Part shown: piece after piece, positions 12,273-60,252 of the stretch
Layout: each line of letters starts with the position of its first letter
Position numbering within the stretch: the stretch's first letter is position 1
Assembly: GCA_002269645.1 (NCBI GenBank)
Contig: NIVC01003251.1
Location: forward strand, 1 to 64,000
Source of the DNA: Macrostomum lignano
Taxonomy: Eukaryota
Length of the DNA: 64,000 nt
Direction: 5' to 3'
Made by a program: the position numbers and the translations under genes
Notes under the pieces: model-generated
The model's input: the letters and a program-made list of their open reading frames with translations, nothing else
Databases searched by the model: none
Told to the model about the DNA's origin: nothing

Positions 12273-13429
12273 GCAGCTGCTAACTTAGCTTTAAGCTAAC
12301 TATGGTTCAGTTTTGACTCTCAGAGCCTGAAACAGATGTCTGCATTACATTCTATTCCTTTGATACACTCCGTGCTTCTCTTGGTCCGCAAAACATTTTC
12401 AGGTTTCTTCGAATGCCAAAGCACAGGCAAAGTAAGTTAGCAACGTCTTGTATATGCGAGTTACTGGATTATCTGGATTAATAACCAGCGTTAGTACTAC
12501 ATGTATAATAGGTTTAGGACTTTAGCTTTAGGTTGTCTCTGTCTAGCAGCAGCAGAAGCAACGGCTAAAACTGAGTATTTTACCTCGCTCTCTTAATGGT
12601 TCCCACAACCAGCACAACTAAAACCTTTATTAAAACCCAGCAAGCTTTAGTTCTATATATCCACCTCCCACTCCCACAGTAAAACCCACCCGGCACAGTC
12701 TTTCCGGTCCCAACATTTCTAAAACAGTAGTGAGTGTCGTTTAATATCGCCATTTTTCTTCTCTCTCTCTTTGTATAAAGCTGCATATGCATAAAGTGAA
12801 GCGGAGGCCCTGCTTGTGTGCAATGTTGGGTTAGTATTGTGTGGGAGTTGGGTTATAGAATGTAGTGTTTGTATGGCCTGCTTCAGTAGGGGGAGGTTAG
12901 CTGTAGGTTCAGATCTATTTGCTTTCTAGACTACTGCAAGGGCAAAACGGACGGCAAGGCGGGAGGGCAGTTGTAGGAGGACAAAGCTTTGGGTCAAATA
13001 CCCACCCCCCAGCGCCAGCCAACCGCCCTGCTCCCCCCGCCCGGGTTTTACGCCCCCAACGGCACATTGTACGGCCGGCCCAAGTGTACAGGGGCAACCC
13101 CCGCGCGCCCCCTATCCAATCTACAGAGTCTTTCCTTATCGGAAAGCCCCCACACAGCCAACCCCCTCCCTCCGCGACCCCGACCCAAAACACGAGGGGA
13201 GAGGAGAGAGGCCGGGCCGTCCCTATAAGGTAAAGGCAAGGCTGGCTAAAACTATAAAACATTTTGGGTGCTTCTCTCTAATACCATACCATATAGGACT
13301 GAGTGCTGTTTTCCGCCCTGCCTTCTACCTAAAAACTGTTTATTCTATTTCCTATTCAATAATATAAATAATTGTTACTACTTACTACTAAAGAAATCAG
13401 TTGAATTTAACAAAGTCGATCTTCAGGTC

Positions 13430-24638
<11,209 letters not shown>

Positions 24639-28803: not shown

Positions 28804-31800
28804 ATGCAGGATCAAAGATCAACAAGAGGACTACTCCTAGCGGCCTTGTTTCTGCTGACAATATTCTCAAACAAAGTGAGTTGTAAGCAGCCAAAGCTCT
28901 ATCCGCAACCAAACTACGAAACTAAGGAGTACTGGACCAGGTGAGTCGTTTTGCAGTTCCTTCTAGCCCCAAATGAATATGGTCAAGCACGGCGTCTACA
29001 TGTGGATGGTGTCCAGATGTCGCGCATATTCTTGAGTCTCCCCTCGTCCCCAGGGATGCCCAGCAGTCCATGGACCGGGCCTCGCGGGTGCTGCAGCAGC
29101 TGCGCTACTCCGCCAAAAACGTCATTCTGTTTATCGGCGACGGCATGGGCGTCAGCACGGTGACAGCCGGCCGGATTCTCAAAGGCCAGCTCAAGAACTC
29201 GTCGGGCGAAGAGGCGTCGCTAGCGTTTGACGAGTTCGACCATGCAGGACTGATCAGGACGTACAACATGGACAGGCAGACACCCGACAGTGCGTCCACT
29301 GCGACCGCCTTCATGTGCGGTGTGAAGACAAACGGCTACATGCTTGGGGTGAACCAGGATGCAAAGCTGGGCAGCTGTTCGACTTACGATAGCCGACAGC
29401 ACGACGTGGTGTCGTTTCTGAAGTTCGCCTCCGAGCAGGTGAGCGTCCAGAGCGGTATTCTTGTAGGGTTGTTGGGATGATTGTTGTAGGGTTGTTGGGA
29501 TGATTGCTGTAGGGCTGTTGGGGTGATTGTTGTAGGGTTGTTGGGGTGATTGTTGTAGGGTTTTTGGGGTGATTGTTGTAGGGCTGTTGGGGGTGACTGT
29601 TGTAGGGTTGCTGGGGTGATTGTTGTAGGTCTGTTGGGGGTGACTGTTGTAGGGTTGTTGGGGTGATTGTTGTAGGGCTGTTGGGGTGATTTTTCTGGGT
29701 AATTCTAGCTGGATAGCTCTCTTTCTCTCCCTAATCTCCTCTTCAGGGCAAGGCCACTGGTGTGCTCACCACGGACCGCCTGACGGGCGCAACACCAGCC
29801 CCAGCCTACGCCAGCTCCGTCAGCCGCCAGTGGCAGGACGACACCGACCGAAACACGGACGACTCGAGCCCGGACTCGCCTGAGCAGCGACGTCGTTGCC
29901 CCGACATCGCCACCCAGCTGGTCGATCGGGCCGTCAATTTCACCGTCCTAATGGGCGGCGGTCGGCTCAAACTGCTGCCGAAAAATGTCACCACAATGGA
30001 CCAGTTTGGCGGCGTTCAGGTGAACGGCACACGCTCCGACGGCATCAACCTGGTGGAGCGCTGGAGCAGCTTGCAGCGGCAGCTCGGCCGGCGCCCAGTC
30101 TACGTGGAAACAGCCGAGGAGCTGAGAAATCTTCGTGCAGATCAAGCCGACTCAGTTCTGGGTCTCCTATCAACCAAGAAGATGCGGTATCACTCGACAA
30201 ATATTCGTTCTGAGGGTTACCGTGAGCCCAGCTTAGCCGATATGACTCGGAAAGCTCTGGAAGTTCTGCGCAAGAATTCCAACGGTTTCGCTCTGATGGT
30301 TGAGGGCGCCCGAATCGACAGCGGTCACCATGCCAACCAGGCCCAGCGGGCTCTCTACGATGTCCTAGCATTCGACGAAGCTGTCCAAGTGGCTACTGAG
30401 ATGACTAGCATTGAGGACACCCTGATAGTTGTGTCTGCAGATCATAGTCACGTTTTCACTATCGGTCACTATGGTTACAGAGGCCAGCCTATTCTTGGAA
30501 AGATGGTTAGCAAGAGTAGCGACGGCTCGCTGCAGTACGAAGTGGCTCCCGACAACATTGAGAAGACCGTGGCCAGCTACAGCGATGGGCCGAGCGCCAA
30601 GCCGAATCAGCCGCGACCGAACATCACTGAGGATGTGCCTGAGGAGAAGGAAAAATACAGGTGACTGCCTTGGATGCAAAGTGGTAGAGAGGCGCCAAAA
30701 CAGACACAGAGAGGGGCGCTAAAATAGACACAGAGTGAGGCGCTAAAATAGACAGAGAGTGAGGCGCTAAAATAGACACAGAGTGAGGCGCTAAAATAGA
30801 CATAGAGAGAGGCGCTAAAATAGACACAGAGTGAGGCGCTAAAATAGACAGAGAGGGGCGCTAAAACAGACACAGAGAGGGGCGCTAAAACAGAGACAGA
30901 GAGAGGCGCTAAAACAGACACAGAGAGGGGCGCTAAAATAGACACAGAGTGAGGCGCTAAAATAGACATAGAGAGAGGCGCTAAAATAGACACAGAGTGA
31001 GGCGCTAAAATAGACAGAGAGGGGCGCTAAAACAGACACAGAGAGGGGCGCTAAAACAGAGACAGAGAGAGGCGCTAAAACAGACACAGAGAGGGGCGCT
31101 AAAATAGACACAGAGTGAGGCGCTAAAATAGACATAGAGAGAGGCGCTAAAATAGACACAGAGTGAGGCGCTAAAATAGACAGAGAGGGGCGCTAAAACA
31201 GACACAGAGAGGGGCGCTAAAACAGAGACAGAGAGAGGCGCTAAAACAGACACAGAGAGGGGCGCTAAAATAGACACAGACAGAGGCGCTAAAACAGAGA
31301 CAGAGAGAGGCGCTAAAACAGACACAGAGAGGGGCGCTAAAATAGACACAGACAGAGGCGCTAAAACAGAGAAAGAGAGAGGCGCTAAAACAGACACAGA
31401 GAGAGGCGCCAAAACAGATAGAGAGAGAGGCGCCAAAACTGACACATAGAGAGGCGCCAAAACTGACACAGAGAGAGGCGCCAAAACAGATAGAGAGAGA
31501 GGCGCCAAAACTGACACAGAGAGAGGCGCCAAAACAGACACAGAAAGAGGCGCTAAAATAGACAGAGAGAGAGGCGCTAAAACAGACACAGAGAGGGGCG
31601 CTAAAACAGAGAAAGAGAGAGGCGCTAAAACAGACACAGAGAGAGGCGCCAAAACAGATAGAGAGAGAGGCGCCAAAACTGACACATAGAGAGGCGCCAA
31701 AACTGACACAGAGAGAGGCGCCAAAACAGATAGAGAGAGAGGCGCCAAAACTGACACAGAGAGAGGCGCCAAAACAGACACAGAAAGAGGCGCTAAAATA

Positions 31801-40822: not shown

Positions 40823-41430
40823 CGACATCATGTGCAGCATCGAATTAACCTGATAACTTAGTCAGAGAAGACAAACTGTTGATAAGTGCCTAGACTAGCT
40901 CTGATTGTGAGCATATAGGCACTGGGTTTTCTGCTGGTTCAAAATCATCGTCTTGAATTCGTGCCATAGTGACGATTTAAACAAAATACACTGCTTGAGT
41001 TTGTTAAAGCGTCAGCATGCCAAAATGTTTCATCCAGAAGTTAATTACTCGATGCTAAGCCGGAGCCGCTTACGACAAATACTTCTTTAGTGGTTGAACA
41101 AATCATCCTTTTTAGCAACAACAAATGTGCAAGCTAGCACTCATAGTAGCAACTATAGAAACTGAAGAAAAAAATGCAGCAAAAAATAAATTAACAAGCA
41201 GCATAGCATTGCAATTTCATATTCAGATGTAAAAAATAAAGAGAAAGCCGAAAATCAACATGTAGGTTTTTACGACGCGTTTCGCACACCAAGGTGCATC
41301 GTCAGGTATATCGTTTAAAACGTAGGTGTGACTTTGACTTACTTGACTTAGCTGCAGGGCTGTCCCGGAGGGGACACAGCGGGAAGGCGCGGGCGCCCAT
41401 TCCGCTAATCCCTGAACGGCCGACGCGTCG

Positions 41431-44400
41431 CTATGGACGGAGGGTTGGCGCCGCCCAGGGAGGTCCCCCAGTGTCGCCAGCAGCTATAGTGCTCTCAGGA
41501 AAGGAGAATTCAGCCCTGCGGGTGGCCCGAAGGTAGCGCATGAGCTGATTAAAGTTTTCGGGTTTGCACGCTTCAGTAATAGATGTGTGTGGCCCGAGGT
41601 AAGTGAGTCTGGCCCGCGTGAAGGCGGGACAGATGCTGACGAAATGCTCAGCGGTTTCGTCACCTGAGTTGCAGAAACTACAGGTGGCGTTGGTGGCGTT
41701 GCCCTGCAGGTACTGGTGCCTGGAGAAGCAGCCGTGACCAGAGAGGGTCATGGTGGCAGCCCGGATGTCTCTGCGCGAGAGGCGCAAGAGGAGCTTCCGG
41801 AGCTGGTGAGAGGGCTGAGGGACAGCGCCTCTGGATTGCCTGCAGCTCGTGCGGTTCGCCCAAGTCGAACGGTGCTGAGTCCTGATCCACGCTTTGATGC
41901 GCGAGTCGATGACACAGCCAGGAATCGGGACAAGAGGTTTGGGGCCGAGAGAGGAGCCGGAGGCACCAACTTTTGCAAGGGTGTCAGCCAGCTCATTTCC
42001 TCGGATCCCCACATGCCCCGGAACCCACTTAAGGGTAATTTTGTTGGCGGAACCCAACACGTTGAGAAGTTTGATACAGTCGAGGACTGTAGCAGAGTTG
42101 GTGCTGCAGCCACTGATGGCGTGCAAGGCAGCTTGGCTGTCCGAATGGAAAATGATGTTCTTGCCAATAACGCCAGTGGCGAGAAGCTCTGCAGTGCAGG
42201 AGCTGATGGCCAGAACTTCATTTTGGAAAACACTGGAGTGTATTGAGCGTGGGTAGCGATGACCCTCCCGTTCAGAAAGATTCCAACACCAAAGCCGGTG
42301 TTGGCTGACTACTTCGAACCGTCGGTGTAGCAATGAAGCTCACCAAGGTTCCATTGCTCATTGATGTTATCGCGCGAGTCGATAGCTACGGAGTAGCGCT
42401 GTCTCAGGTTGAGCGTTGAGGCAATGCCATCGGTGAAGACGCGATTGGCCTGACACTCGTTGAGAAAGTTGAGGCACAGGTCGCTATGCGGGACAAGGTT
42501 CCGCTTAGCAGGTGCTCTCATGTAAATGAATTTGACGCCGGCATCAATTAGACGCCGCGTCGTTCTAGCCGCCTCACCCCTGACGAAGAGTCAAGAGGCG
42601 GTAGATTAAGGAAGGCCCCCATGCCAGCAAAGGGCGTGGACCTGGTGGCGTTGCAGATGAGCCTACACGCTCTGCCTTGGATCGTGTTGAGCAGGTCTGC
42701 ATGGCTTTTGACCTGGGTAGCGCTAACCCAGACAACAGAGGCGTACGTAATGGCAGGTCTAACTACGGAAGTATAGATCCACCAAAGCCGCTTTGGGGAT
42801 AGACCCCAAGAAGTGCCAAGTGCTCGTCGGAGCTGGGCCAGGATGGCTGAGGCACGCTTGGCTTTTGCTTTCACGTGGAAGGACCAGTTGAGCTGGTGGT
42901 CAAGTGTGACCCCGAGACATCTGGTCTGGTGCGCGAAGGCAATATCTCTGCCGTAGAGCTGCAGAGGACGTATGTTCCAGCGTAGTCTGCTGGTAAACAT
43001 AATGGCAACGGTTTTGGGCTCAGAGAGTTCCAGACCATTGTCATTGGCCCAGGATTCTGCTTTGCGGATAAAGCTCTGCATCAGATCCCTGAGCGTGCTG
43101 GGAGACGGTCCTGCCACAATGGCCGTGACGTCATCAGCATACCCGACTTTGAAGACGGGGTCGGGTCGGGAGTCACTCAAAAGAGCGTCCATGACCAGGT
43201 TCCAGAGCGTCGGGGTGAGGACTCCGCCTTGGGGTCCACCCTTACAGACTTTGGTGGAGGCAGTTTGCCCAAGAATTTGGGCAGTGACCGTACGGTTGGA
43301 GATCATGTACATGATCCACCGTATGAGGGTAGCATGAGCTTTGCGATTTTGAAGGGCCCTCTGAAACGCTTCAAAGATAACGTTGTCGAAGGCGCCAACA
43401 ATGTCAAGAAAGAGAGCCAGGGCGTAACCGTCACCCAGTACCGCCCTTTCAATCTTCTCGACAATCGCATGCAGGGCGCTGTCAGTCGACCTCCCGGTAC
43501 GGAAGGCGTGCTGATTATTGCTGAGGGGCATCGCTGTCAGCTCGCAGGACAGCAGCCGCCAGAGAATAAGCCTCTCAGTGAGCTTAAGCATTGCTGACGT
43601 TAAGCTAATAGGCCGGAAGGCCTTGACGCTTTGGTAGTCACCCTTCCCAGGTTTGGGAATAAAGACTACCCGAGCTTCAGTCCAGCATTTGGGAACGTAT
43701 CCCAGCTGGATAGAGGCCCGCATAAGATTGCGGGTGAGTCTCAGGAACGAGGGTATCTTGGCTGCTTCACGAAGGAGAACAGGGTAGATACCATCAGGTC
43801 CAGGAGATTTGAAGGGTTTGAAGGTTCTGACCGCACGAGCGATTAGGTCTTCAGTGACAGTGCCCGCCGCTAGGGTGGCTCCATCCATCGAATGGTTGGG
43901 CTCCGGTCTAGCAGTAGGTATCCTCGGGAAGAATGTGCTAAGCGTTTGCTGAAGCACTTCTTCAGGGTCTTTAGTAAGAGAGCCATCATCTTTTTTGATC
44001 ATGGCTAATTTGGACATTTTGTCCATTGTAAGGGCCTTGACAAGCCTAGAAGTAGGTCTGTCTTGATCCAATTCATTGCAGAATTGGCGCCACTTACATT
44101 CCTTGGCCTTGCGCACTTCAGATTTGAATTTGCGGGAGGCTTGCCGGAAAAGCTCCATGTCCTCCGGGTTTCCGGTCTTCATGGCACAGCGATGAAGGCT
44201 TTTGGCCTTCCGCCTGAGTTTCCCCAGCTCCGGGTTCCACCACGGCGCCGAGGTCTTGCCTTTGTAGGCGCGAGCAGGACAAGCCGCTTCGTAGGCTGCA
44301 ATAATGCAACCTGTCAGCGTCTCAGCCATATGATCCACATCCTCGCAGGTCTCAATCGGACGTAAGTCCGTGAGTTCCTGCAGGTGCAGATCAAGGGCAG

Positions 44401-45157
44401 CCTTGTAGGCCGCCCAATCAGTGTTGCGGATATTGCGCCTCCAAGTGATCGGAGACTGGGTTTTAGTGTCCGCGATGTTAAAGGCGATAAAGCAGTGGTC
44501 AGACAGGGAGGGCTCCTCAGACCAGACTCTCCACTCCTCAACTCTGTCAAAGAGTCTTGGGTAACGAGTGTGGCGTCGAGGACCTCGGTCCATCTGCCAT
44601 TATTAAAGGTACGAGTGCTGCCGCGGTTGCAGAGCATGAGGTTTGTGTTAGAGATGAGGGCCAGAAGCTCCTCTCCTCTAGTGTTGGTATCTTTGCTACC
44701 CCAGTGCTTGTGATGCGCGTTGAGGTCGCCCCCTAAGCACAACTCAGCGTTCTGGGACTCGCAGTACTGCGCAAGGCGCAGTAAACTCTCGGGAGCAGGG
44801 TCTCTGTCGCCTGGGATATAAACCGAGGCAACAAGACACGTACGCGGAGAGAAATGATTAGATTGGATGACGCAAAGGTCTCCATCAGAGAGATCAGTCC
44901 TCAGCCAAGCCTGGAGATGGCTAGCAGCGAGGATAGCCGCTCTAGGGCGGCTGTTCCCCGGGCCACACACAAAAATCAGAGTCGCCAGAGGGAATGTTGG
45001 GCAACTTACCGTTGCGCATCCAGGGTTCCTGGATCAGGATGAGGCCTGGCCTGTACAGCTCAGCAATCTTCATCAGATTTACTGACGCAGATACGCAATG
45101 CTGTAAATTAATTTGCAGACAGAATGTCGCTCCTTTGGCAGCGTGGAGCTTAGTCAT
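41431..45157 (-). pseudogene. LINE ORF2 (APE endonuclease-RT-RNase H), disrupted
   Basis: Consecutive minus-strand ORF pieces 45157-44942, 44970-44314, 44593-42548, 42521-42309 and 42333-41431 carry the domains in order. Confidence 0.92.
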
Positions 45158-45196
45158 ACTGTATTAAATGCAATGTCTGGCTAGAGCCCAGGGCCA

Positions 45197-46757
45197 TCAA
45201 GGAGACTTGGACAACAGATCGTCCTCGTCCCAGGCCGCTGGGGCTTGACTGGGAGATGGGAGTTGGTCGACGTCCATGGCCTCCTCACCCCCACCGGCCA
45301 CCCCAGCAGAGTCCTCAGGCTCCGATGACAGGATGGAGGAAGCTTCCTTACCTGCATCTTTACCTTCAGACCCCACCAGGGTGGCCGAGGAGAGCTCGGA
45401 TTCCGAAGACCCGGCCTCGTCCTCAACTCCTTCTCCGACTAGCAGGTTTGGTTCCCGGGGCTTGGCCGGAGCCGTTACCGCGGTCGCCGAACTGCTGCTA
45501 GCAGAGGGGCGAGACGCAGCTTTGGCTTTGGGATCGGCTTGCGCCTTTCCTTGGGTCTTAGACTGCGCCCCGCTCTTGCCGGAGATGCCGGGGTTGGCAG
45601 TAGCCTTCCCTTTGGCAGACTTTCCTCGGCGCATCTTGAGCTTGAGGGCATCCAGCTGGAAAGAGGATCCATTAGGGTACCGACTCGCCCAAGTGCTGGA
45701 AAGGCCGAGGACAATTGAGTTGCCCGTCTCCCCCCTGCGGACTTGGCGGTGATACACCAGTCCACTAGCAGGGAGGTCGGGGTTCAGACGCAGTAGGACC
45801 CGGCGGATAACGTCTGGTCCAGCTGCGGTGCTCTTAGCAGGGACGAAAACCATAGGGTATCGTCTTTGGACGCTGGCCCTCGCGAAGAAAAAGAGCTCCG
45901 CCAAGGTCAGCATCCAAGGAGACCGTCGGTAGCCGCTGGAGCAGCTGCCGAGCGTCCTCCTCGCTGCTAGGAGCAATAAGAACGAATGTGCTTCGCAGCA
46001 CCATCCGCTCAATGCCGATGGAGATTCCCTCCTCGACAGTCAGCTCAATCAGATAGGAGTCAACAGCACTCCACACTTTTTGAAGCTGATCAGTGGTCCA
46101 GTCCTGGTCGCGACCTTGGATGATCACTCCCGGGATTTTGGCCTTGGCCTTCGCCGCAAAGGTAGCTCCCGAAGGAACCTCCTTGTTGGCAGTGGCCATT
46201 TGCTGCGCCGTGGTTTCGGCCTCAGCAGCCGCAGCAGCATCTCCAGGGAGCGCCGCCGCTGAACTACTGGAGCTTCCACCGGCCGGCCCGCCTGGTTGCC
46301 TTGGGACTCCAGTCGCTTCAGCATCCATGGTGGACGCCGCCGCTTTGGCCCCCGCAGCTCCCTGCTTGGCCTGCCTTTTGGCGCGTTGTTTAGCGCGTTT
46401 GCGCTCAAGCCGAGCCCGCTGAGCTTCATCGGATCTGCCAGATTTGGCCGGTCCTTTAGGCTCAGAGCTCGCGGTTCCCTTAGATCCACCAGCGGAGCTG
46501 GAAGGTCTTTGGGCATTTTGAGTTTGGTAGCTCTGGTCGGATCTGCCAGCAGAGCCAGCCGGTCCTTCCTTTGCCACAGTTGAATCAGTCGGTTGGGATC
46601 TGCCAGCAGGGCCGGCCGGTCCTTCGGACTGAGGTTGGGGTTTAGAAGGGTCCCCGTCCCTAGAAAAAGCTTGGTTATCCATAGTCGGCTCGAAGGCCAT
46701 GATAAAAGGTTGTTGGGCTACCCTCAAAGGGGCGCGGTACCCACCCGGCCGCTCCAC
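45197..46757 (-). pseudogene. LINE ORF1 (DUF4780-like, LOA-type), frameshifted near 45860
   Basis: Two overlapping ORFs (46757-45834, 46012-45197). VFVP...VIRRVLLRLNPDLP resembles the LOA ORF1 domain. Confidence 0.65.
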
Positions 46758-50579: not shown

Positions 50580-53361
50580 CCATGAGCGGGCGGATGGCCC
50601 GAGTTCGGGTCATCCCACCAGCACCGAAGCGAACGGCTGCGCGTTTGTAAAAGTCTATGGCAAATCAATCATCATCTCAGCACTCCCGTTCCCGACGGGA
50701 ATGGCCCAATTTCGGGTCAGTGTCTAAGAAGGTTGCAAATAGTAGATGACGCAAAAATGAGAATTATTAGCTTAGATATGTCACACCTGTAATTTTAATA
50801 ACTCGTTTATAATAAAACTACTGTGGAAGTTTTTTAACAAAACTGTAAAAATTTATTGTACGAAGTAAGCTTGTTCCCAATGAAGCCGGAATAGTCTAAT
50901 TACATGACTTATAAGGGACAATTTCCAAGTAGGAAAAGATGTAAACACTGGAGCATCTGTAAGACACGAGTAAGCAGGATGGTACAATGAGTAGGTAGGT
51001 AGGTAGTTAGGTAGGTGGTTAGGTACATGTGGGTAGGTGATGAAAGGGAACGGCCAGTTAAGGGATTGTGCCTGAATAGGAGACTCAGAACTGTGGTACA
51101 TGCACTTGCACGGGACTGCAATAGAGCCGAAAAATTCATACACGAATAATGCAACGCATAACAATTCAGTGAATAACGAACATTAACATCAACAAAAATT
51201 CGAATACGTAATAACGGTTTTGATTCATCTAATGGTTTGAAGGTAATAAAGCTAATAGCTAATAGTTAGTGCGAGAGTGCCAGTGTGAAAAACAGGCACC
51301 TAGGCAAAGGGCTGGAACTCCCGGGCAGGCTTCGCAAACGAATGTAGTCTTCTTGACCTGGCCAGCTGCATAGCACACACGACATCTTTTGCGTGGTCGG
51401 ACCTGGTCTTCCGATTCTTGGAGCCTTGCTTGGTGAATGGGCGTCAGCACCATCTCCTCCGCCAATAGCAAGAGCGCCAGCACCACCTGGTGTAGGTCCA
51501 CGTCTCCTGGCAACCCCAGCGTCCTCCACAAGTCTCTTTATTGCCAGCCTCAGAAACTGCAGAAAGGTCTTGGTGCCACCTGACTGTCGGTAGATCATCC
51601 ACGAGTTCTGCACAAGCATCGCAAGAAGATGAAATCCCATATTGTGGAACCAGCGCATGCTCTTTCGGTTCGCGAGGTACGGGTGCATTGAGGCATCCAA
51701 ATGGTCAATCCCGCCCATACTGGAAGAATAGGCAAGCACGCTAGCAGGCTTTTGCACTACCGCGACGGTTGCGTTGAACCTGAATGCATTCTGCCTTGCC
51801 CGCCGTGTCCAGCAAATACAGGGTCTTGGTGCCGCTTTGCTTCCTGTCGACAAATTTACACGCTAAGAGGTCACCTGAACGTGCGAATGCAGATGAAGTT
51901 GGGTGGATGTTGACAGCCTGCAAATCAGCGGGAATGCCGCGATCCTTTCGCACCGTCCCAGCCAGCAGCGTATCGTGTTGCAGCAACCAATCGACCAGCC
52001 GGCGTGATGTAAACCAACTATCAGTGAACACATGATGTCCGAGATGGAGGAGACCGCGGCACAGCTCTGCCACAACTCTCACGCTCATACTCATGCCTTG
52101 ACATCCGAGTCGTTCACCAAACTGTTGATTAACCTCAGGAGACGTGTGGATGACGAAGTTCCATAAATGACACAACGGAGACACGACAGGAGCTGCTTAA
52201 ATCGGTCTCTTGATAGAGAGAAAGGCTTGGAAAGAAACGGGCAGTGAAAGATCAGGTCGGTTGACCAGTAGCTGGCTATTTCTGGCTTCTTGTCGACTCC
52301 CATGAGCAGCACAATGCCCACCAACTTTCGAGCTTCATTAGTGGAGCAATCACGCCAGTTTAACACCAGCTTCGGTACAGCATCCTGAGTCTCTGCCTCC
52401 TGAAAGATCTTCCAGGCTTTTGCGTTGGTCCATCGGCTAATATCTTCAAACAGTTGATCCGTCAGAAATAGCTTCAGGAAAGCTTCTTCGTTTCCATCCG
52501 CAGCATGTGGAGAATGCCAATCAGGTCGTGCACCGGGCTACCGAGGAATTCAGGCAAGGCTGATGGTCGATTATCAGTGTCAGCTTGAACCATGTGCCAC
52601 TCACCAACGTGTTCGACTCCTGGGTTCTCTACCTTATCTTCAAACTCATCAACGGCCTCGTCAGCAGTTGAGTAATAGCTGGACGAATCAGCTGAATCCG
52701 AACTCGCACCAGAATCCATGGTTTGTTGATAAACGATTAGTTTGAATGGATCTTGGAAACTCTATGCCAGAACTCTATGAAATGAATTTGACTTTAACAG
52801 CTCCCGACGTCTACGGGTGTGAAAGTTAGACTAAGAAAATTTGTCTAATTTGTCTATGGCCCGATTTCGGAGCCGTCGGGACTATGGCACATTATGTTAC
52901 TTATGGCACACTATGGCACATTATGTTACTTATGGCACACTATGGCACATTATGTTACTTATGGCACACTATGGCACATTATGTTACTTATGGCACACTA
53001 TGGCACACTATGGCACACTATGGTACACTATGGCACAGTATGGCACACTATGGCACACTATGGCATACTATGGCACACTATGGCACACTTTGGCACACTA
53101 TCGCACTCTGGCACAATATGGCATACAAAGCAAATTTTCTGACTGTGGTAGCTTGTAACAGAAAGACATCAACACACACTGTATGGCCTGAGCCACTACA
53201 TTCGAAAATTACAGATTTATAATCTGAAACTGTAACACTGAAACACTATCGCAGGAAAATGATCTTCGCTATCTATTGTCAACAAATGCACAGAGAGGGC
53301 AGATAGATGGTTGGTTTGAGGTTAGAATGTACGAGGATTCCTGGGCCCGCTTCGCTTAGGG
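50580..53361 (-). mobile_element. piggyBac-family DNA transposon, internally deleted and frameshifted (transposase remnants ~52719-51259)
   Basis: FLKLFLTDQLF..I..WTN, LLMG..KKPEIASYWSTD, SRDRFKQLLSCLR, HVFTDSWFTS, GTVRKDRG, MGGIDHLD and a C-terminal CRVC...C..C...LC...CF..WH cysteine-rich domain. Left end is TTAA|CCATGAGCGGGCGG; right end reverse complement is CCCTAAGCGAAGCGG with a degenerate TTAA. Subterminal ATGGCCC..TTCGG repeats at ~50595, ~50701 and ~52856. Confidence 0.85.
52880..53120. repeat. 10-bp minisatellite (TATGGCACAC)n inside the piggyBac 5' region
   Basis: Directly visible. Confidence 0.9.
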
Positions 53362-54923: not shown

Positions 54924-57900
54924 TCAACGCCTCTCAACAAGTTGAATCAACCGATCCAACTTTGCTTCAACGTCGTTGATCTGCTTGCGTCGACGTTTTG
55001 ACTGCAGCTTCAGGTTGACGAGCTTTGCTTCGATGCCGGTCGAGTCCGACCGCTTTGAAGTTGCCGCCGATCGAGTCCGGCCCAGCGAATCGATGCCTCG
55101 CTTTACAGCCGCGAAGTTGTTGTCGGCGCGAGCCTGCACTCCGTCCGGGTCGCTGTCGGCGTCCACAATCCCACGAGTCAGATATCTTCGACCGAACCGT
55201 CGGAACTGCTTGGCTTGAAACTTCAGGAACTGGGTGTACACTTTCGGATAATCAGTCTGACTGTACCACCAGTTCTGCAAGGCAAGGGCCAACATTTAAG
55301 TTAAACAGGCTAAATGCATCTTAATTAATAGTGTGTGCTCAAACGTTCATTTAGTATGCAGCAGAGAGAAACAGAGAGCGGATAAACAATAGCTTTCAAA
55401 TAGTTTAAAAAGCTCTTCTTACCTGTTTAAGAGCAATCCATAGTTTACATATTAGCTACAATAGAATCTTGCGCTGCTACGTATGCAGAGAAAATTTTGT
55501 ATTACCACTTCAAAAGTCTCTTGCTTCTCTTGAAGATGACAATATCAGACACGCGTCTACTGGTTTGTGGAAAGTATATATCGGCAATGCAAAAAGCTTG
55601 CACGCGGCAGGTAAAGGAAGTATAGCATAGAATTTCTGCTCAGCCTAGCTAATGGGTGTATTTTAGCCTTAAGGCAAGCCAATTGAAGAAGTCTAGGTGT
55701 CAGAGACCCGTCCTGGCAACATCATCTGGGTTCGAGTTCACTTTTGACAGCGGAAAACAAAGTTGAGTTTGGAGGTGTTAGAGAGTGTTAAAGGATGAAT
55801 ATACATTTTAAATGCTTTAAAAAGCGACTGACACTTACCGTGCTCTTACTGTAATGCTCGACATTTTGTAGTGCATCGCGAAATGACCAGTAAATGTAGA
55901 AAAGTCCGACGAAAGTCGCATAAATCACATAGATTGGTGACGGGACGGCGCACATCCGGTTGCACTCAACCAGCATGTCGAAGTACATTCTTCTCCAGAC
56001 TATCTTGGACTTGCTGGCAATTTTGCTCACTCTCAGGCTGAACAATGCAATCAGCAGATTAACCATGACGATGTTAACCAGCAGAAGGAATACAAACATG
56101 AAGCAGTTGTAGAACGCATCACTGCCTTGGTCATAGGCCATGGAGCCGATTTCATACCCAGTAAGGTTGGTACTGTTCACGCTATTAAATTTAATCTCGT
56201 CGAAATTTGTGAACATTAGCTTCAAGGGAAGCGTAAACACCTGGACAAGCGACAGCCAGTAGTTCGCTCCCGCTGGAACAGGGAACAGCAAGTGAAAGAA
56301 GAAAATCCCGAAGGAATATATCACAATCAGAATTATTGACAGAAACGGTAGCAGGTCCAGAAGTAGCAGTTGAACCAGCATCATAACCATGGGCCCCGTC
56401 TTCTCAAAGAATGTCAAAAGTGAAATCAGACGAATTCCCCAAATTAGGAAGCTGGCAGCTGTGAGCATTCTACCGGAGTAGTCTTTATAAAGCAGAACGC
56501 CTAGAAAACCAACAAAAAAAGAGGCCGCACTGGCCAATTCTAGCCAAGAGAGTGCTCTGTTGGTGCTCGAGAAGGGCAGGGAAGACCTGAATATTACACG
56601 AAAAGCCAACTTGAAATGATTTGAAATTCCATAGACAGCGAAGGCTGACTTTGACTTAGCTGCAGGGCTGTCCCGGAGGGGACACAGCGGGAAGGCGCGG
56701 GCGCCCATTCCGCTAGTCCCTGAAGACAGCGAAGGCATACATCAAAACTTGATCGTAAATATACGTATTACTAGACAATGAATAAGCTTCATTCCGTATC
56801 GGAATTCCAATACTAAATAAAGACAGCAAGATTAAAGCTAACACATCAGACGCGCAGTACGAATAAAACTTTGCACGTGGTGAAGCGGCTGGATATCTCT
56901 CTAGCCAAATAATACCGACACCACTCTTAACGTCTTCATCGTTGGGCAGCAGATCCCTAGTCAGACTGCTGTGCCGGTTCTTCCATTCCGTGTCGGCCAG
57001 CTTGGTCATGCACTCACTGACAAACAGCTCATCACAATCAGCTTCCAGCAGCAGTCGCACAGTTGTGCACGGCTCAATAGCATCCTTCTTAGTCTCGTCA
57101 AGCATGCCCGACGTCGGGTGCACACAGGTGAACTGCGGGCCGCTACTTTTTGGCTCCATCCGGCCACAAATATAGTCGAAGAGCAGTTGCTGCTCATAGG
57201 CGCTGGCATTGCGAAACATTTCATCAAGAGCGTTGAATGCAATGCATTTGAGCTTCTGTCTCAGTTCCTTAATCTCCTCGCGCTGCTCAGGAATCTCCTT
57301 CAACTTTCGCTTGAGCTCAGTTAGTACTTTCAGGCATGTAGGAATTAGCTCGAACTGTCTCGTGAGCACTAGGTCCGGTATGATCTTGAATTTATTGAGA
57401 AACAACGCTGTCTCAATGATGGACATCTCTGTTGCCTGAGTAAGATTTTCAGGATGTAAAATCGATGCAGCCAAGTACTCAGTTTCCAGGCTGATGAAGC
57501 CCATGCTTATTGCACTACGCAGAATCTCAGGCGCGTCAAGTTCAATAGAAGTGACAAGAAGGTTTACACCTGAGAGTGCTCTCTGATGTTGCTTAGGGAC
57601 ACTCGCTGATACACTGACGGAGCTCAGAACTCTGTTGGCCGTCTCCCTATCAGGCAGATCCAATGCTCGCTTCGGCAAGTCCAGAAGTCTCAGCAGGTTT
57701 GTCTTTCTCCCGCCACTGCTCAGAAATGCTTTCTCAACTGCGCCATCCTTTCCACTGTTGCAGGCAAAGTCGATCGGTGTGAGTCCGTCATGGGTCGGTG
57801 AGGACAGCGACAAGCCCTTTTCAATGAGAAACTTGATGTTGCCCTCATGACCTGCTTGACACGCAAAGTGAAGACAAGAAGCTCCTCTGTGAGTTCCTGA

Positions 57901-60252
57901 CGAGACTGTCAGTGACAGCAGTTGGGATGCTTCGATGCCAGATAAGCAGGCAAGTGGCTCAACAAAGTCTTTCAAGCGGTACCTGGTGGCAGCGAGATGA
58001 ACCGCATGCGTCCCACTTGAGCTGTGAAGCATTGCCTTGATCAGCTTTCAAACATTGTTGGTGTCCACGGCCGCTTCTAAAATTTGCTTCAACAAGTTCT
58101 CTCGAATTTTGCACACTTGGAGACAAGTCTTACCAATGCTGTTCTCAGTTCCCGGATTTACTCCGGCTTTGGCAATGAGCTTCAGCGATTTGATGAAGGC
58201 TTCTATGCCGCTAGTTGCCGTAGTGTTCATGAAGAGTGCGTGCATCAGGGTGTTGCCGTCAGCGTCAACGCGAGTCATTTCATCGCTTGTTTTGAAAGGC
58301 TCGAGTGCAGCCACGTTCCAGTTGAAGCTCGCATAGAAAAGCGGGTTTCTCCCTGATGCGTCCAAGGATTTCAAGGACTTATCGAGTTCGCCAGGGAAAT
58401 TTTCCTTCAAGAAATTGTAAGACTTGACGTTCGCAAAAGCAAGGTGCACCACTGTTTGTTGTTTGTTATTTCGCCAGAAGATGCAGTCACTCGCGAGCTT
58501 CTTCACAGCGGCATCAGTGAAAGTGAGCATGCCCCGGGAGATAGCGAGATGCAATACTGTGTTGCCTGCGTCATCTGCGGCTTTGAGAACAGCAACCCTG
58601 GCAGCTGGTAGCAGCTCCAATAGAGTGGCCTCATCTTCACGGTGTGCCAAGCAATGCAGCACTGTCTGACCCAGTTTGTTCTGCTTCAACAGGCCTTCTG
58701 AGCCAGAAATCCTGAGTGCAGTGAGAAGTGCTTCTGAACAGTCTGTCCTATGGGCCATGTAGTGCATGCACGTGTTTCCAGAAGTGTCCTGCAAGCTGAC
58801 GCATGCGGTATTCATTGCATTCAGCAGTCGCAACAGCACGCTTGGCTGGCAGTGCACCGACGCCAGATGTAATGCCGTCTCTGACTTGTTGTTTAACCAG
58901 CAGGGGCATCTGAGATTTCTCAGCAGTGCTGCTTTATGCTTATCTAACATGGCGTTTTTCATAGCCTGCCTCTCAGCGTACTCAAGGACAGCTAACATTG
59001 CGTTATCATTATTTTCGTTCATAGCGGCATAGTGCATCCACGTGTTTCCATCCCAATCAACCAGGCCAAACCTTTGGGCAACTTCCGGGTTTAAAGGCAA
59101 CTCTGAAGACAACCTGAGCATTTGTTTTATGGTATCTACTCTGCAGTTTTGAAGCACCAGCTGCAACACCGATTGATTTTTGTTATTTTTCCACCGAAAA
59201 CTCTTTGGAAAAAACTCAACAGCCCGAAGTACAGCCTCGTCTGCACCTCGCATGGCAGCATAGTGAATGCTGGAGTTTCCCTGTTGGTCTTTCGTTTTAA
59301 GATGCTTCGTGAGACAGCCACTGCGTGTGTGACCAATCTCTAATAAAGCCGGTATTCTCTCTGGACTGAACTTCTCAATCGACATGTGCAGCATTGTTTG
59401 TCCAGCGGAGTTCGGAGCAAACAGATCACTGCAACTGGTGGGTGTTGAGTCAACCAGCAGACTCAGCACGTCCTGGTGCTCTATGTTTGAGGCGGCATAG
59501 TGCGCTATGGTGTTTCTGCGTGACGTCTTCAGCATCTTGAGCAGTTTGGAAACCATTTCACCACCATCTATGATGTCAGAGAGGATTTTTCTCACGGTGC
59601 CAGTAGAATGGCAACCAAGCGAGAGGTGGAGCGGCGTGACCGCCTTGTAGTCGTCTTTGAGCAGAGCTTGAGACCCGAACAGCCCCAGAATGTGCAGCAA
59701 TGTGGACTCTCCATCGGTGCTCATCGCTGCATAGTGAGCTGCAGTTCGTCTGCTTTTATCGTGAACATGCTGACCCGAAAAGTCATTGGGTATTTGCATG
59801 AGCAGTTCATTGGCTTCTGAGAATCTACCAACTTTTGTCAAACGAATAATTCTTCTCATAAAGTCCTTCTCTGCACACTCTTTGAGCACCTCTACGGCCT
59901 TGTGCGAAGTGTCTGTTGAATCTTGATAGTCGCTTGAAGAATCCTCACGACAATTCATAGTAGTGCCATCTTCTTGGTCCAACTCGGCTTCTGAGTCGCT
60001 ACTGTCGCAGTCCAGTTGAAGGACGGCATCGGATTTTACATGCAGACCAGATTGATGAAGTTCAGTGGGTTTCGGCAGCTGTGCTTCATCATCTTCACCG
60101 TCTCGCTGATGGAACTGGGCTGACGACTTTTTTTCAGCGAGGCTTTGCTCGGTAGAGCTGCCGCCAACGAAGCTCGCATCGACGTCTACAATTGTCAACT
60201 CCCTGACGTTGTGGCTGCCGTCACTGCTTCCACTTGATATCTCATCCGTCAT
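54924..60252 (-). pseudogene. Ankyrin-repeat TRP cation channel with TRPM-type core; disrupted by TGA at 58050-58048 and a LINE fragment at 56646-56723
   Basis: Large exon 60252-55839 reads ...AVDTNNV*KLIKAMLHSS... in one frame. It carries ~17-18 ankyrin repeats, an MHR4-like region, TM helices (GPMVMMLVQLLLLDLLPF; LLVNIVMVNLLIALF) and a TRP-box-like VWRRMYF..VPSPIYVI. Phase-0 donor after 55839; last exon 55274-54924 ends in a coiled coil. Extra small exons are not excluded. Confidence 0.85.
56646..56723 (-). mobile_element. 78-bp 5'-truncated copy of the LOA LINE 3' end
   Basis: Matches ~41342-41415 apart from one substitution and a shorter tail; flanked by 13-bp TSD AGACAGCGAAGGC (56633-56645, 56724-56736). 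Confidence 0.95.

What the first reader, a model, noticed from the sequence alone, without database searches (positions are those of the whole stretch)
54924..60252. TRP channel joining a long ankyrin array to a TRPM-type core
Seen: ~17-18 ankyrin repeats (RTAAHYAAM, VTPLHLSL, NTWMHYAAM, ETALHLAS, NTVLHLAIS, ASCLHFAC...) are followed by ETALFLNKFK...EIKELRQKLKCIAFNALDEMF...TTVRLLLEADCDELFVSECMTKLADTEW, then TM helices, KIVWRRMYFDML...VPSPIYVI and a terminal coiled coil. Established: long ankyrin arrays mark TRPA/TRPN, whereas canonical TRPM channels lack ankyrins and carry MHR1-4. The middle segment here aligns by eye to TRPM MHR4/pre-S1 (WAVL.NR...ELA..FE..AI....CY; TTCLQLA.EA...FV......L..IW). 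Inference: this is a chimeric or lineage-specific TRP subfamily in which ankyrins replace MHR1-3. About 4.4 kb of it is one exon.
Basis: partly seen in the sequence, partly recalled or inferred. Interest (0 to 1): 0.75.

Follow-up and report, generated by a model that had tools for sequence, protein, structure and literature searches.

The report
Broken ankyrin-armed TRPM-like channel gene
This flatworm (Macrostomum lignano) locus is a disrupted copy of an ion-channel gene that joins 18 ankyrin repeats to a melastatin-type (TRPM) channel core, one of a flatworm-wide group of such channels that the TRP papers I searched do not describe and that contradicts the textbook statement that TRPM-type channels lack ankyrin repeats.

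Summary
On the minus strand (60252..54924) a 4.4-kb exon plus one 351-nt terminal exon encode about 1,557 aa. The parts, in order, are a disordered N-terminus, 18 ankyrin repeats, a helical linker, S1-S6, a TRP helix and C-terminal long helices.

The channel core is TRPM-type. A family profile hits only TRPM among the best 60 PDB sequences (2.8e-29). The Foldseek top 50 are all TRPM2/3/4. Size-matched profile-profile scores are TRPM 159, TRPN 83, TRPC 85 and TRPA 48. No SLOG/MHR1-2 exists anywhere in the window.

MHR3/4 homology of the linker is recovered only through a bridging flatworm clade. That clade carries ankyrins, the Pfam TRPM2-like domain and Ion_trans, and it occurs in Opisthorchis, Fasciolopsis, Dicrocoelium, Schistocephalus and Macrostomum.

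The window gene belongs to a Macrostomum expansion of about 30 clusters at 50% identity. This copy is broken. It has an in-frame TGA (Gly in paralogues).

Deep phylogeny is weakly resolved (neighbour-joining only). I found no paper describing this architecture.

The parts
59905..60252 (-). Start codon (60252-60250) and acidic, Ser/Asp-rich N-terminus, aa 1-116, predicted disordered.
   Evidence: ORF. The N-terminus matches paralogues P0001, P0002 and P0007 from Met1. AF2 pLDDT is about 30 for aa 1-116.
57721..59904 (-). Two capping helices followed by 18 ankyrin repeats (aa 117-844). Many repeats are long or degenerate. Repeat 15 is interrupted by the stop codon.
   Evidence: Pfam Ank_2 1.5e-24 and Ank_4 1.3e-14. 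AF2 solenoid with pLDDT mostly above 85. Foldseek best matches are ankyrin-1, AnkB, NOMPC and DmTRPA1 with 17 repeats. The xxxLHxA motifs are spaced 31-81 aa apart.
58048..58050 (-). In-frame TGA at codon 734, a nonsense lesion between the halves of ankyrin repeat 15.
   Evidence: Paralogue models P0001, P0002 and P0007 read ...DTNNVGKLIKAML..., with Gly at this position.
56884..57720 (-). Helical linker, aa 845-1123. It contains an MHR3 remnant (LLVTSIELDAPEILRSAISMGFIS, 57576-57490), an MHR4-like helices region (TEMSIIETALFLNKFK..., from 57432), and the pre-S1 motif TTVRLLLEADCDELFVSECMTKLADTEWK (57066-56980).
   Evidence: hhalign of clade A against clade B: 94.6%, E 6.5e-8, 129 columns. Merged A+B against TRPM MHR3/4: 99.1%, E 2e-18, 252 columns. 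HMM alignment to TRPM4 residues 652 onward. AF2 predicts an all-helical fold, and Foldseek alignments to TRPM span 670-919 columns. Direct A against TRPM was not significant.
56737..56883 (-). S1 (SPRAKFYSYCASDVLALILLSLFSIG) and the first half of S2, up to ...YDQVLMY.
   Evidence: HMM alignment to TRPM2 S1 (sPrakfy / SPQVKFY). AF2 helices. Coordinates.
56646..56736 (-). Frame-breaking 91 nt inside S2. It consists of a 13-bp target-site duplication copy (56736-56724, GCCTTCGCTGTCT; the second copy is at 56645-56633) plus a 78-nt 5'-truncated non-LTR retrotransposon 3' end (56723-56646) that ends in an AAGTCA-type tail.
   Evidence: There is one mismatch to the 3' end of the LINE at 41329-41415. 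Zero matches are expected by chance. No canonical splice sites are possible at this position.
55839..56645 (-). Rest of S2, then S3, S4, the S4-S5 linker, S5, the pore helix and filter (…PLKLMFTNFD, 56258-56199), S6 (FYNCFMFVFLLLVNIVMVNLLIALFSL, 56114-56034), the TRP helix (KIVWRRMYFDMLVECNR, 56006-55956) and the post-TRP motif VPSPIYVI.
   Evidence: phmmer and HMM alignments to TRPM3, TRPM2 and TRPM4. AF2. Coordinates.
55275..55838 (-). The only intron: GTAAGT...TTGCAG, phase 0, 564 nt.
   Evidence: The reading frame is restored exactly. Paralogue P0004 also has a break between its main ORF (6001-8685) and a last ORF (8631-8999) near the 3' end; I did not map its splice sites.
54924..55274 (-). 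Last exon, aa 1442-1557. It encodes long C-terminal helices (rib/pole-like) ending in a coiled coil (IEAKLVNLKLQSKRRRKQINDVEAKLDRLIQLVERR). The stop codon is at 54926-54924.
   Evidence: ORF. AF2 helices 749-779 and 786-821 of the 822-aa model. The family profile aligns with the zebrafish TRPM2 C-terminal helices up to profile position 702.
41329..46757 (-). Context: a near-full-length non-LTR retrotransposon (RT ORF 42548-44593, RNase H ORF 41431-42333). Its 3' end is the family that inserted into the channel gene.
   Evidence: Pfam RVT_1 2e-28 and RNase_H 3.2e-7. 3' end alignment.

Best explanation
The locus is a recently inactivated copy (pseudogene or null allele) of a Macrostomum lignano gene from a flatworm group of tetrameric six-TM cation channels.

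Architecture (shown). The channel half is of the TRPM type: S1-S6, pore, TRP helix, post-TRP Pro motif, C-terminal helices, and the MHR3-remnant/MHR4 linker. The N-terminal nucleotide-binding SLOG domain (MHR1/2) of TRPM/TRPS is absent. An 18-repeat ankyrin solenoid stands in its place.

Likely mechanism of intact relatives (inferred):
- They assemble as tetramers through the TM domain and the C-terminal coiled coil.
- They conduct cations through a pore whose filter reads F-T-N-F where TRPMs have [FY]-G-[EQ]-[IV].
- They couple the cytoplasmic ankyrin/MHR4 ring to the gate through the TRP helix.
- Protein or cytoskeletal contacts, or mechanical or thermal inputs on the ankyrin array, would replace ADP-ribose/nucleotide sensing.
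- The sister clade B keeps the TRPM S2/S3 Ca2+-site signature (EExR[QE] ... WNxxD). The window's subclade has lost it.

This copy (shown). A G-to-T nonsense change at codon 734 and a LINE 3'-end insertion with a target-site duplication inside S2 mean it cannot make a channel. At most it makes a 733-aa ankyrin-only protein.

Origin (inferred, least certain). A flatworm-lineage TRPM-type gene exchanged its SLOG module for ankyrin repeats, diverged rapidly, and expanded in Macrostomum as nearly intronless genes.
For: Organism and family:
- The closest proteins are all Macrostomum lignano.
- About 36 clusters at 50% identity cover the whole linker+TM+coiled-coil profile at E below 1e-47.
- An intact annotated paralogue (P0013, PAA74666.1) carries ankyrins through most of the Ion_trans domain in one 1,684-aa ORF; the rest of the 1,761-aa product follows about 130 nt of intron.

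TRPM-type core:
- PDB profile search: TRPM2 2.8e-29, and the best 60 are all TRPM.
- Insect references against the family HMM: TRPM 60 bits, TRPN 29, TRPV 8, TRPC 5, TRPA 0.
- hhalign: A-TRPM 296 (159 with two sequences), against TRPN 83, TRPC 85, TRPV 69, TRPA 48.
- AF2 model pLDDT 75.7, with the Foldseek top 50 all TRPM2/3/4.

Linker:
- Clade B members P0045 and P0047 in my scan, and P0080 by precomputed annotation, hit Pfam PF25508 (TRPM2-like domain); P0045 and P0047 score above the curated cut-off.
- B against TRPM MHR3/4: 99.5%, E 8e-23. A against B: 94.6%. A+B against TRPM: 99.1%.

No SLOG: Pfam finds none, the local SLOG HMM is negative, ANK and SLOG are mutually exclusive across the hits, and the six-frame translation of the window has none.

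Inactivation.
Against: - Direct linker-to-TRPM MHR comparison is not significant.
- The window protein itself hits neither Pfam Ion_trans nor TRPM2.
- Neighbour-joining bootstrap support for {A,B,TRPM} against {TRPN,TRPC,TRPA,TRPV} is only 25-39%, and A+B is only 15-19%.
- SLOG-bearing TRPMs form a clade (90%) that excludes A and B. The ankyrin clades could therefore be an old sister lineage rather than derived TRPMs, or long-branch artefacts.
- Reference TRPN, TRPC, TRPA and TRPV sequences were insect only. TRPS could not be labelled.
- The lesions could in principle be assembly errors or allele-specific.
- No expression or functional data exist. The pore and Ca2+-site readings are by alignment only.
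Confidence: 0.78

Rival explanations
1. The family (clades A and B) is an ancient, separate Group-1 TRP lineage, sister to TRPM+TRPS. It kept ancestral ankyrin repeats that TRPM/TRPS replaced by SLOG. It is not a flatworm-specific domain swap inside TRPM.
For: - SLOG-bearing TRPM-like sequences are monophyletic at 90% to the exclusion of A and B.
- B is sister to that clade in about 40-49% of replicates.
- ANK and SLOG are mutually exclusive.
- MHR3/4 are reported to contain degenerate ankyrin repeats (Burroughs 2015, as cited in PMC13143021).
- Himmel et al. infer ankyrin loss before the TRPM-TRPS split (PMC7306681).
Against: - Every member whose organism could be named is a flatworm. An old origin would need losses in all other animal phyla.
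- Both clades have long branches, so exclusion from TRPM may be long-branch attraction.
- The tree is neighbour-joining only, with low deep support.
- TRPS was not identifiable among the hits.
Confidence: 0.25
2. The gene is a divergent TRPN/NOMPC- or TRPA-type channel (the known long-ankyrin TRPs). Its TRPM resemblance is convergent, or reflects features shared across Group 1.
For: - A long ankyrin array occurs in NOMPC and TRPA1. The N-terminal model matches the NOMPC and DmTRPA1 arrays.
- With a single-sequence phmmer query, NOMPC scored 5.5e-10, similar to TRPM4/5.
- The pre-S1 motif is shared by TRPC, TRPN and TRPM.
- A+TRPN appears in 5-10% of bootstrap replicates.
Against: - Profile scores favour TRPM about twofold or more in size-matched tests.
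- No TRPN, TRPA or TRPC structure appears in the best 60 PDB profile hits or the top 50 Foldseek hits.
- The linker shows no similarity to the TRPN or TRPC linkers (0.1% and 0.6%).
- Sister clade B carries a Pfam TRPM2-like domain.
- Ankyrin solenoids match any long ankyrin protein equally well.
Confidence: 0.05
3. The locus is functional. The TGA and the 91-nt segment are assembly or sequencing errors, a polymorphism of one haplotype, or are bypassed by readthrough or unconventional splicing.
For: - Apart from the two lesions the reading frame is intact over 4.7 kb, and outside S1-S4 it stays above 95% identical to paralogues. Any inactivation is therefore very recent.
- Another family locus (L001) also shows a frame break between its ankyrin ORF and its channel ORF. 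This hints at assembly indels in this genome.
Against: - The insert has the hallmarks of a real retrotransposition: the 3' end of a LINE present in the same window, a 13-bp target-site duplication, and a repeat tail. That is not an error pattern.
- No GT-AG intron is possible there.
- The TGA is a base substitution, not an indel-type error.
- No gene with the 734-aa ORF product is on record in the assemblies collection I queried, and no NCBI protein is among the close matches.
Confidence: 0.1
4. The architecture is a gene-model artefact: an ankyrin-repeat gene lying next to a truncated TRPM-like gene.
For: Database models of the closest paralogues are fragmentary and skip segments. In Schistocephalus the ankyrin and channel parts are annotated as separate proteins on one contig.
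Against: - In the window, ankyrin repeats 16-18, the linker and S1 lie in one uninterrupted ORF (58032-56713).
- The same order recurs in more than 20 Macrostomum paralogues, in an intact 1,684-aa single ORF, in an uninterrupted 1,072-aa ORF on a run-assembly contig (P0044), and in a 1,413-aa Schistocephalus sequence (P0191).
Confidence: 0.02

Closest known systems
TRPM (melastatin) channels, e.g. TRPM2, TRPM3, TRPM4 (PDB 6drj, 8ddr, 6bqr)
   Same: - The S1-S6 core, TRP helix with the invariant Trp, post-TRP Pro-rich motif, C-terminal long helices and MHR4-type pre-S1 linker are shared.
- TRPMs are the best sequence-profile and structural matches.
   Different: - There is no SLOG/MHR1-2 domain.
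- There are no NUDT9H, kinase or TRPM_tetra Pfam hits.
- Eighteen ankyrin repeats stand in place of SLOG.
- The TRP box reads VWRRMY, not WKFQR.
- The filter reads FTNF, not [FY]G[EQ][IV].
- The S2/S3 Ca2+-site residues are lost in this subclade.
- The group falls outside the SLOG-bearing TRPM clade in neighbour-joining trees.
Flatworm 'clade B' proteins, unnamed or auto-named 'TRPM7' or 'ankyrin repeat protein': Opisthorchis viverrini OON13731.1, Fasciolopsis buski KAA0186122.1, Dicrocoelium CAH8570744.1, Schistocephalus A0A0V0J4K6, M. lignano PAA51132.1 and PAA66045.1
   Same: - The order of domains is the same: ankyrin repeats, helical linker, TRPM-like TM domain.
- The linkers are homologous (94.6%).
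- The TM profile score is 302-359.
- These are the nearest non-family relatives.
   Different: - Clade B has fewer ankyrin repeats.
- Its MHR3/4 is clearly recognisable (Pfam PF25508 above the curated cut-off for P0045 and P0047; listed for P0080).
- It has the TRP box LWQFER and a TRPM-like filter (GE) and Ca2+-site motif.
- Identity to the window protein is only 17-20%.
TRPN / NOMPC
   Same: Both have a long N-terminal ankyrin solenoid, a TRP helix and the shared last ~100 aa of the pre-S1 linker helices.
   Different: - NOMPC has 29 regular repeats, against 18 irregular ones here.
- TM profile similarity is about half that to TRPM.
- The linker is not detectably similar.
TRPA1 and insect TRPA channels
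   Same: Both have 14-17 ankyrin repeats and a C-terminal coiled coil. The N-terminal model superposes on Drosophila TRPA1 (TMq 0.44).
   Different: TM similarity is the lowest of all Group-1 families tested (0 bits and hh score 48). TRPA1 has no TRP-box Trp.
TRPS (soromelastatin, ced-11-like)
   Same: TRPS is the sister family of TRPM and is a divergent TRPM-like channel (PMC7306681).
   Different: TRPS is described as SLOG- and Nudix-linked and ankyrin-free. It was not tested directly, because no labelled TRPS sequence was available.

Membership tests
TRPM | Six-TM core and TRP helix homologous to TRPM, and closer to TRPM than to the other TRP families. | tested here: met
   TRPM scored best in every sequence-profile, profile-profile and structural comparison.
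TRPM | N-terminal SLOG domain (MHR1/2; Pfam LSDAT_euk). | tested here: not met
   There is no Pfam hit. A local SLOG HMM is negative for all clade A and B members. The six-frame translation of the 64-kb window has none.
TRPM | MHR3/MHR4 region (Pfam PF25508, TRPM2-like) before S1. | tested here: inconclusive
   The window protein has no PF25508 hit, and the direct hhalign is not significant. The link is recovered through clade B (94.6% then 99.5%) and through a merged profile (99.1%, 252 columns). Foldseek alignments to TRPM cover the linker.
TRPM | Absence of canonical ankyrin repeats (as stated in PMC7306681). | tested here: not met
   There are 18 ankyrin repeats.
TRPM | Phylogenetic placement inside the TRPM clade. 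| tested here: not met
   SLOG-bearing TRPM-like sequences form a clade at 90% NJ bootstrap that excludes clades A and B. The method is weak (neighbour-joining, 291 columns).
TRPM | C-terminal tetramerisation coiled coil. | tested here: inconclusive
   There are long C-terminal helices, and the HMM alignment runs into the TRPM2 C-terminal helices. There is no Pfam TRPM_tetra hit.
TRPN (NOMPC) | TM core closest to NOMPC, plus the NOMPC-type linker after the ankyrin spring. | tested here: not met
   TRPN scores 29 bits against 60 for TRPM and hh 83 against 159. The linker comparison gives 0.1%.
TRPA | TM core closest to TRPA1 or Painless. | tested here: not met
   About 0 bits. The hh score of 48 is the lowest of all families.
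Flatworm ankyrin-TRPM-like group (clades A and B, unnamed) | Ankyrin repeats, then a TRPM-type linker, then a TRPM-like TM domain, with no SLOG. | tested here: met
   The window protein is 28-35% identical to most clade A paralogues in the alignment and 85% identical to P0007.
Functional gene (as opposed to pseudogene) | Uninterrupted reading frame through the channel domain. | tested here: not met
   There is a TGA at codon 734 and a frameshifting 78-nt LINE insert with a 13-bp target-site duplication in S2.

The most novel reading that the evidence does not exclude
Clades A and B together are a ninth Group-1 TRP family: ankyrin plus MHR3/4 plus a melastatin-type core. They branch beside TRPM+TRPS and preserve the pre-SLOG, ankyrin-bearing state of the melastatin lineage. 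That would make the origin of MHR3/4 from ankyrin repeats, and the timing of SLOG acquisition, directly testable. It would also add a new set of candidate drug-target channels in parasitic flatworms.
Probability: 0.22. Interest if true: 0.8.

Novelty: new variant of a known kind. Interest (0 to 1): 0.6.

Why it matters
TRPM and TRPS are described as the TRP families without ankyrin repeats, and their ancestor is reconstructed as SLOG-linked and ankyrin-free (PMC7306681).

Here, a flatworm-wide set of channels has a TRPM-type pore and MHR3/4 linker but carries ankyrin arrays instead of SLOG. This shows the N-terminal sensor module of the melastatin lineage is exchangeable. It also gives a natural experiment on how cytoplasmic domains couple to a TRPM gate.

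Flatworm TRPMs are anthelmintic targets (TRPM_PZQ, TRPM_MCLZ). The trematode and cestode members are currently auto-annotated as 'TRPM7' or 'ankyrin repeat protein', so they are uncharacterised relatives of those targets.

The Macrostomum expansion has about 30 divergent, nearly intronless paralogues, with at least one fresh pseudogene. That suggests rapid birth-and-death evolution of a sensory channel family.

The specific locus in the window is a dead copy and of little interest in itself.

Tried and rejected
- **Pfam on the window protein.** It found only ankyrin families. There was no Ion_trans, LSDAT, TRPM2 or TRPM_tetra hit, so the domain calls had to come from profiles and structure.
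- **Word-indexed homologue searches.** They returned only 2-4 proteins each. The exhaustive HMMER search was what revealed the family.
- **The 91 nt as an intron.** I tried every boundary within the 13-bp repeat. None gives GT-AG or GC-AG, so this reading was rejected.
- **The 183 nt that paralogue gene models skip (VSVSAS...ENLTQ).** I considered whether it is an intron. The segment contains residues invariant across the family (LRS, TE), so I treated it as coding.
- **Direct hhalign of the clade A linker against TRPM MHR3/4.** Not significant.
- **Neighbour-joining trees with three distance corrections and a reduced taxon set.** The deep nodes stay below 50%. With a single TRPN reference, TRPN was drawn next to a long-branch Taenia sequence. 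Those rogue taxa were removed.
- **A home-made single-repeat ankyrin HMM.** It undercounted badly. The repeats were counted from the AF2 models instead.
- **Look-ups of the window ORF and of P0001 in the assemblies.** Not on record.
- **Organism of the Logan/ENA members (DRR639838, ERZ8811445).** It could not be established.
- **Literature searches for an ankyrin-bearing TRPM-like clade.** Nothing was found. The library is limited to open-access papers.

Full report
**What is in the sequence**

The finding lies on the minus strand. Four collinear ORFs run from 60252 to 54924.
- 60252-58051 encodes 733 aa and ends at an in-frame TGA (58050-58048).
- Reading resumes in the same frame at 58047 and runs to 56737.
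- A 91-nt segment (56736-56646) shifts the frame.
- 56645-55839 continues to a GTAAGT donor.
- A 564-nt GT-AG phase-0 intron (55838-55275) leads to a last exon, 55274-54924.

Removing the 91 nt and reading through the TGA gives 1,557 aa. A tblastn search of the window finds no second copy.

**The two lesions are real mutations, not gene structure**

The 91 nt is bounded by a perfect 13-bp direct repeat, GCCTTCGCTGTCT (56736-56724 and 56645-56633). No position within the repeat gives canonical splice sites.

The 78 nt between the repeats matches the extreme 3' end of an element at 41329-41415 on the same strand. There is one mismatch, and the AAGTCA-type tail is shorter. Zero matches are expected by chance. 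Upstream of that end lie a reverse-transcriptase ORF (42548-44593, RVT_1 2e-28) and an RNase H ORF (41431-42333).

The segment is therefore a severely 5'-truncated non-LTR retrotransposon insertion with a target-site duplication. It sits inside S2 (...YDQVLMY|AFAVYGISNHF).

At the TGA, the closest paralogue models read Gly (...DTNNVGKLIKAML...). This copy can encode at most a 733-aa ankyrin protein. It is a young pseudogene or a null allele. Outside S1-S4 it is still above 95% identical to its nearest paralogue, P0007.

**Organism and family**

The closest database proteins are all from the free-living flatworm Macrostomum lignano.

An exhaustive HMMER search used a profile of the linker, TM and C-terminal parts against 1.84 billion representatives. 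It found 810 hits. About 36 clusters at 50% identity match the whole profile at E below 1e-47 ("clade A"). Every one that I looked up is from M. lignano.

An intact annotated member exists. P0013 (PAA74666.1) has 1,761 aa. At its locus one uninterrupted 1,684-aa ORF runs from the ankyrins through most of the channel domain, followed by about 130 nt of intron. The architecture is therefore not a gene-model artefact. In the window itself, ankyrin repeats 16-18, the linker and S1 also share one ORF.

**Ankyrin array**

Pfam detects Ank_2 at 1.5e-24. An AlphaFold2 model of aa 1-734 has a disordered acidic N-terminus (aa 1-116) followed by a confident solenoid (pLDDT mostly 85-96). Its best PDB matches are ankyrin-1, AnkB, NOMPC and the 17-repeat Drosophila TRPA1.

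Helix pairs give 14 complete repeats before the stop, one repeat that spans it, and three after it. The total is 18.

**Channel core**

Every test placed the core closest to TRPM.
- Single-sequence phmmer against the PDB gave TRPM3 (7.5e-14) and TRPM1 first. NOMPC scored 5.5e-10, comparable to TRPM4/5.
- With a three-member family profile, the best 60 PDB sequences are all TRPM (TRPM2 2.8e-29 down to TRPM8 2.4e-12). The alignments run from S1 through the TRP helix. For zebrafish TRPM2 they continue into the C-terminal helices.
- I took insect TRP sequences from Additional file 2 of PMC2753570 as labelled references. Against them the family HMM scores TRPM 60 bits, TRPN 29, TRPV 8, TRPC 5 and TRPA 0.
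- Profile-profile scores for the TM region are A-B 302, A-SLOG-TRPM 296, A-TRPN 83, A-TRPC 85, A-TRPV 69 and A-TRPA 48.
- With a size-matched two-sequence TRPM profile the score is still 159, against 83 for TRPN.
- An AF2 model of the 822 aa after the stop was built from an alignment of 36 sequences that contained no canonical TRPM. It has pLDDT 75.7 and pTM 0.69.
- The Foldseek top 50 for that model are exclusively TRPM3, TRPM4 and TRPM2. The alignments span 670-919 columns, so they include the linker.

**Linker and the MHR question**

The next-best group in the exhaustive search ("clade B") consists of:
- M. lignano proteins;
- proteins from parasitic flatworms: Opisthorchis ("ankyrin repeat protein"), Fasciolopsis and Schistocephalus (auto-named "TRPM7"), and Dicrocoelium;
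- a few sequences of unknown source.

These carry ankyrin repeats and Ion_trans. P0045 and P0047 also hit Pfam PF25508 (TRPM2-like domain) above the curated cut-off, and P0080 lists it among its precomputed domains. In a canonical TRPM, PF25508 lies between SLOG and the TM domain (P0141).

hhalign results for the regions upstream of S1:

| Comparison | Probability | E-value | Columns |
|---|---|---|---|
| B vs SLOG-bearing TRPMs | 99.5% | 8e-23 | 251 |
| A vs B | 94.6% | 6.5e-8 | 129 |
| A vs TRPM (direct) | 10% | not significant | - |
| Merged A+B vs TRPM | 99.1% | 2e-18 | 252 |
| A vs NOMPC linker | 0.1% | - | - |
| A vs TRPC linker | 0.6% | - | - |

In the merged comparison, the window's LLVTSIELDAPEILRSAISMGFIS falls on the TRPM "AL..D...FV.LLL..GV" helices of MHR3. 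ETALFLNKFKIIPDLVL falls on the "WAVL.NR..A..FW" helix of MHR4.

The TRPM pre-S1 ~100 residues do match NOMPC and TRPC (92.8% and 96.7%). The TTVRLLLEADCDELF...EW motif, which aligns to TRPM4 ATCLQLAMQADARAFF...KW, is therefore a Group-1 feature, not a TRPM-specific one.

No SLOG exists in the protein or anywhere in the window. Across the hits that I could place in the tree, ankyrin and SLOG are mutually exclusive with a single exception (P0141), and they track the TM-based clades exactly.

The accurate description is this: ankyrins replace MHR1/2, and a reduced MHR3 plus MHR4 are retained.

**Phylogeny**

Only neighbour-joining with bootstrap was possible (291-304 columns). Support values:

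| Grouping | Bootstrap |
|---|---|
| Clade A | 74-96% |
| Clade B2 | 94-100% |
| Clade B | 28-67% |
| SLOG-bearing TRPMs | 90% |
| {A,B,TRPM} vs {TRPN,TRPC,TRPA,TRPV} (present in the best tree) | 25-39% |
| B sister to TRPM | 40-49% |
| A+B | 15-19% |
| A+TRPN | 5-10% |

The TM domain does not group with TRPA or TRPN. Whether A and B are a sister lineage of TRPM(+TRPS) or fast-evolving derived TRPMs is unresolved.

**How it probably works**

This section is inference from alignment. Intact members should form tetrameric cation channels. They keep S6 (LLVNIVMVNLLIALF), the TRP-helix Trp, the post-TRP Pro motif and the C-terminal coiled coil of TRPMs.

Clade B keeps the TRPM-type filter (…GE…) and the S2/S3 Ca2+-site signature (EExR[QE], WNxxD). 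Clade A has F-T-N-F at the filter. The window's subclade has lost the S2/S3 polar residues and has a shortened S2-S3 segment. This suggests altered selectivity and loss of Ca2+ activation.

Without SLOG or NUDT9H, nucleotide gating is not expected. The 18-repeat array docked on MHR3/4 is the likely input module, through protein or cytoskeletal tethering, or through mechanical or thermal sensing as in NOMPC and TRPA1.

**Novelty**

Himmel et al. [quoted passage not shown]

A 2026 survey of TRPM domain evolution (PMC13143021) mentions ankyrins only as degenerate repeats within MHR3/4. Flatworm TRP reviews and the planarian TRPM paper do not mention ankyrin-bearing TRPM-like channels. A 2026 choanoflagellate preprint names a WD40-bearing TRPW clade but nothing like this one.

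The proteins themselves are public but unnamed or mis-named. I therefore rate this a new variant of a known kind. The caveats are that the literature search covers open-access texts only, and that the window's own copy is dead.

Noticed in passing
window 41329-46757 (-): A near-complete non-LTR retrotransposon with an RT ORF (42548-44593) and an RNase H ORF (41431-42333). Its 3' end carries an (AAGTCA)-like tail. It is the source family of the insert in the channel gene.
   Followed up: partly
window 29762-30664 (+): A 300-aa ORF with a strong alkaline phosphatase match (Pfam 1.5e-64). It is probably one exon of a neighbouring gene.
   Followed up: no
window 23433-24638 (+): A 401-aa ORF ending in a RING-H2 zinc finger (zf-RING_2, 3.8e-13).
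   Followed up: no
window 52841-53222 (+): A tandem repeat that is open in all three frames and gives 'AHYGTLWHTM'-type peptides. It is almost certainly a non-coding satellite.
   Followed up: no
window 11177-12299 (+): Overlapping ORFs in three frames over a Pro-rich low-complexity repeat. The Cornifin match is below threshold.
   Followed up: no
window 56400-56880 (-), aa ~1150-1250: S1-S4 is far more diverged from the closest paralogue P0007 (by eye, many substitutions per alignment block) than the rest of the protein (above 95%). Both lack the S3 N..D motif present in P0003 and P0004. The voltage-sensor-like domain is evolving fast in this subclade.
   Followed up: partly
window 54927-55034 (-): The C-terminal coiled coil (RRRKQINDVEAKLDRLIQLVERR) resembles by eye the C-terminus of Drosophila Painless (RRKQEQINDSRLKLIEYKLEQLIQLVQDRK, from PMC2753570 Additional file 2). 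Not tested statistically.
   Followed up: no
P0141 (1,708 aa, organism unknown): A canonical SLOG + TRPM2-domain + Ion_trans channel that also has an N-terminal ankyrin pair (Ank_2 at residues 63-119, 1e-7). It is the only hit that combines SLOG and ankyrins.
   Followed up: partly
L001 4769-6001 (M. lignano NIVC01001044.1): At the paralogue P0004 locus, a 408-aa ankyrin ORF ends 5 nt before the annotated start codon and lies in another frame. Either the annotated protein is N-terminally truncated by an assembly indel, or this copy is also disrupted.
   Followed up: partly
window 57432-57615 (-): Database models of the three closest paralogues all splice out a 183-nt in-frame segment (VSVSAS...ENLTQ). 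In the window it is open and contains family-invariant residues. The paralogue gene models are probably wrong there, or the segment is alternatively spliced.
   Followed up: partly
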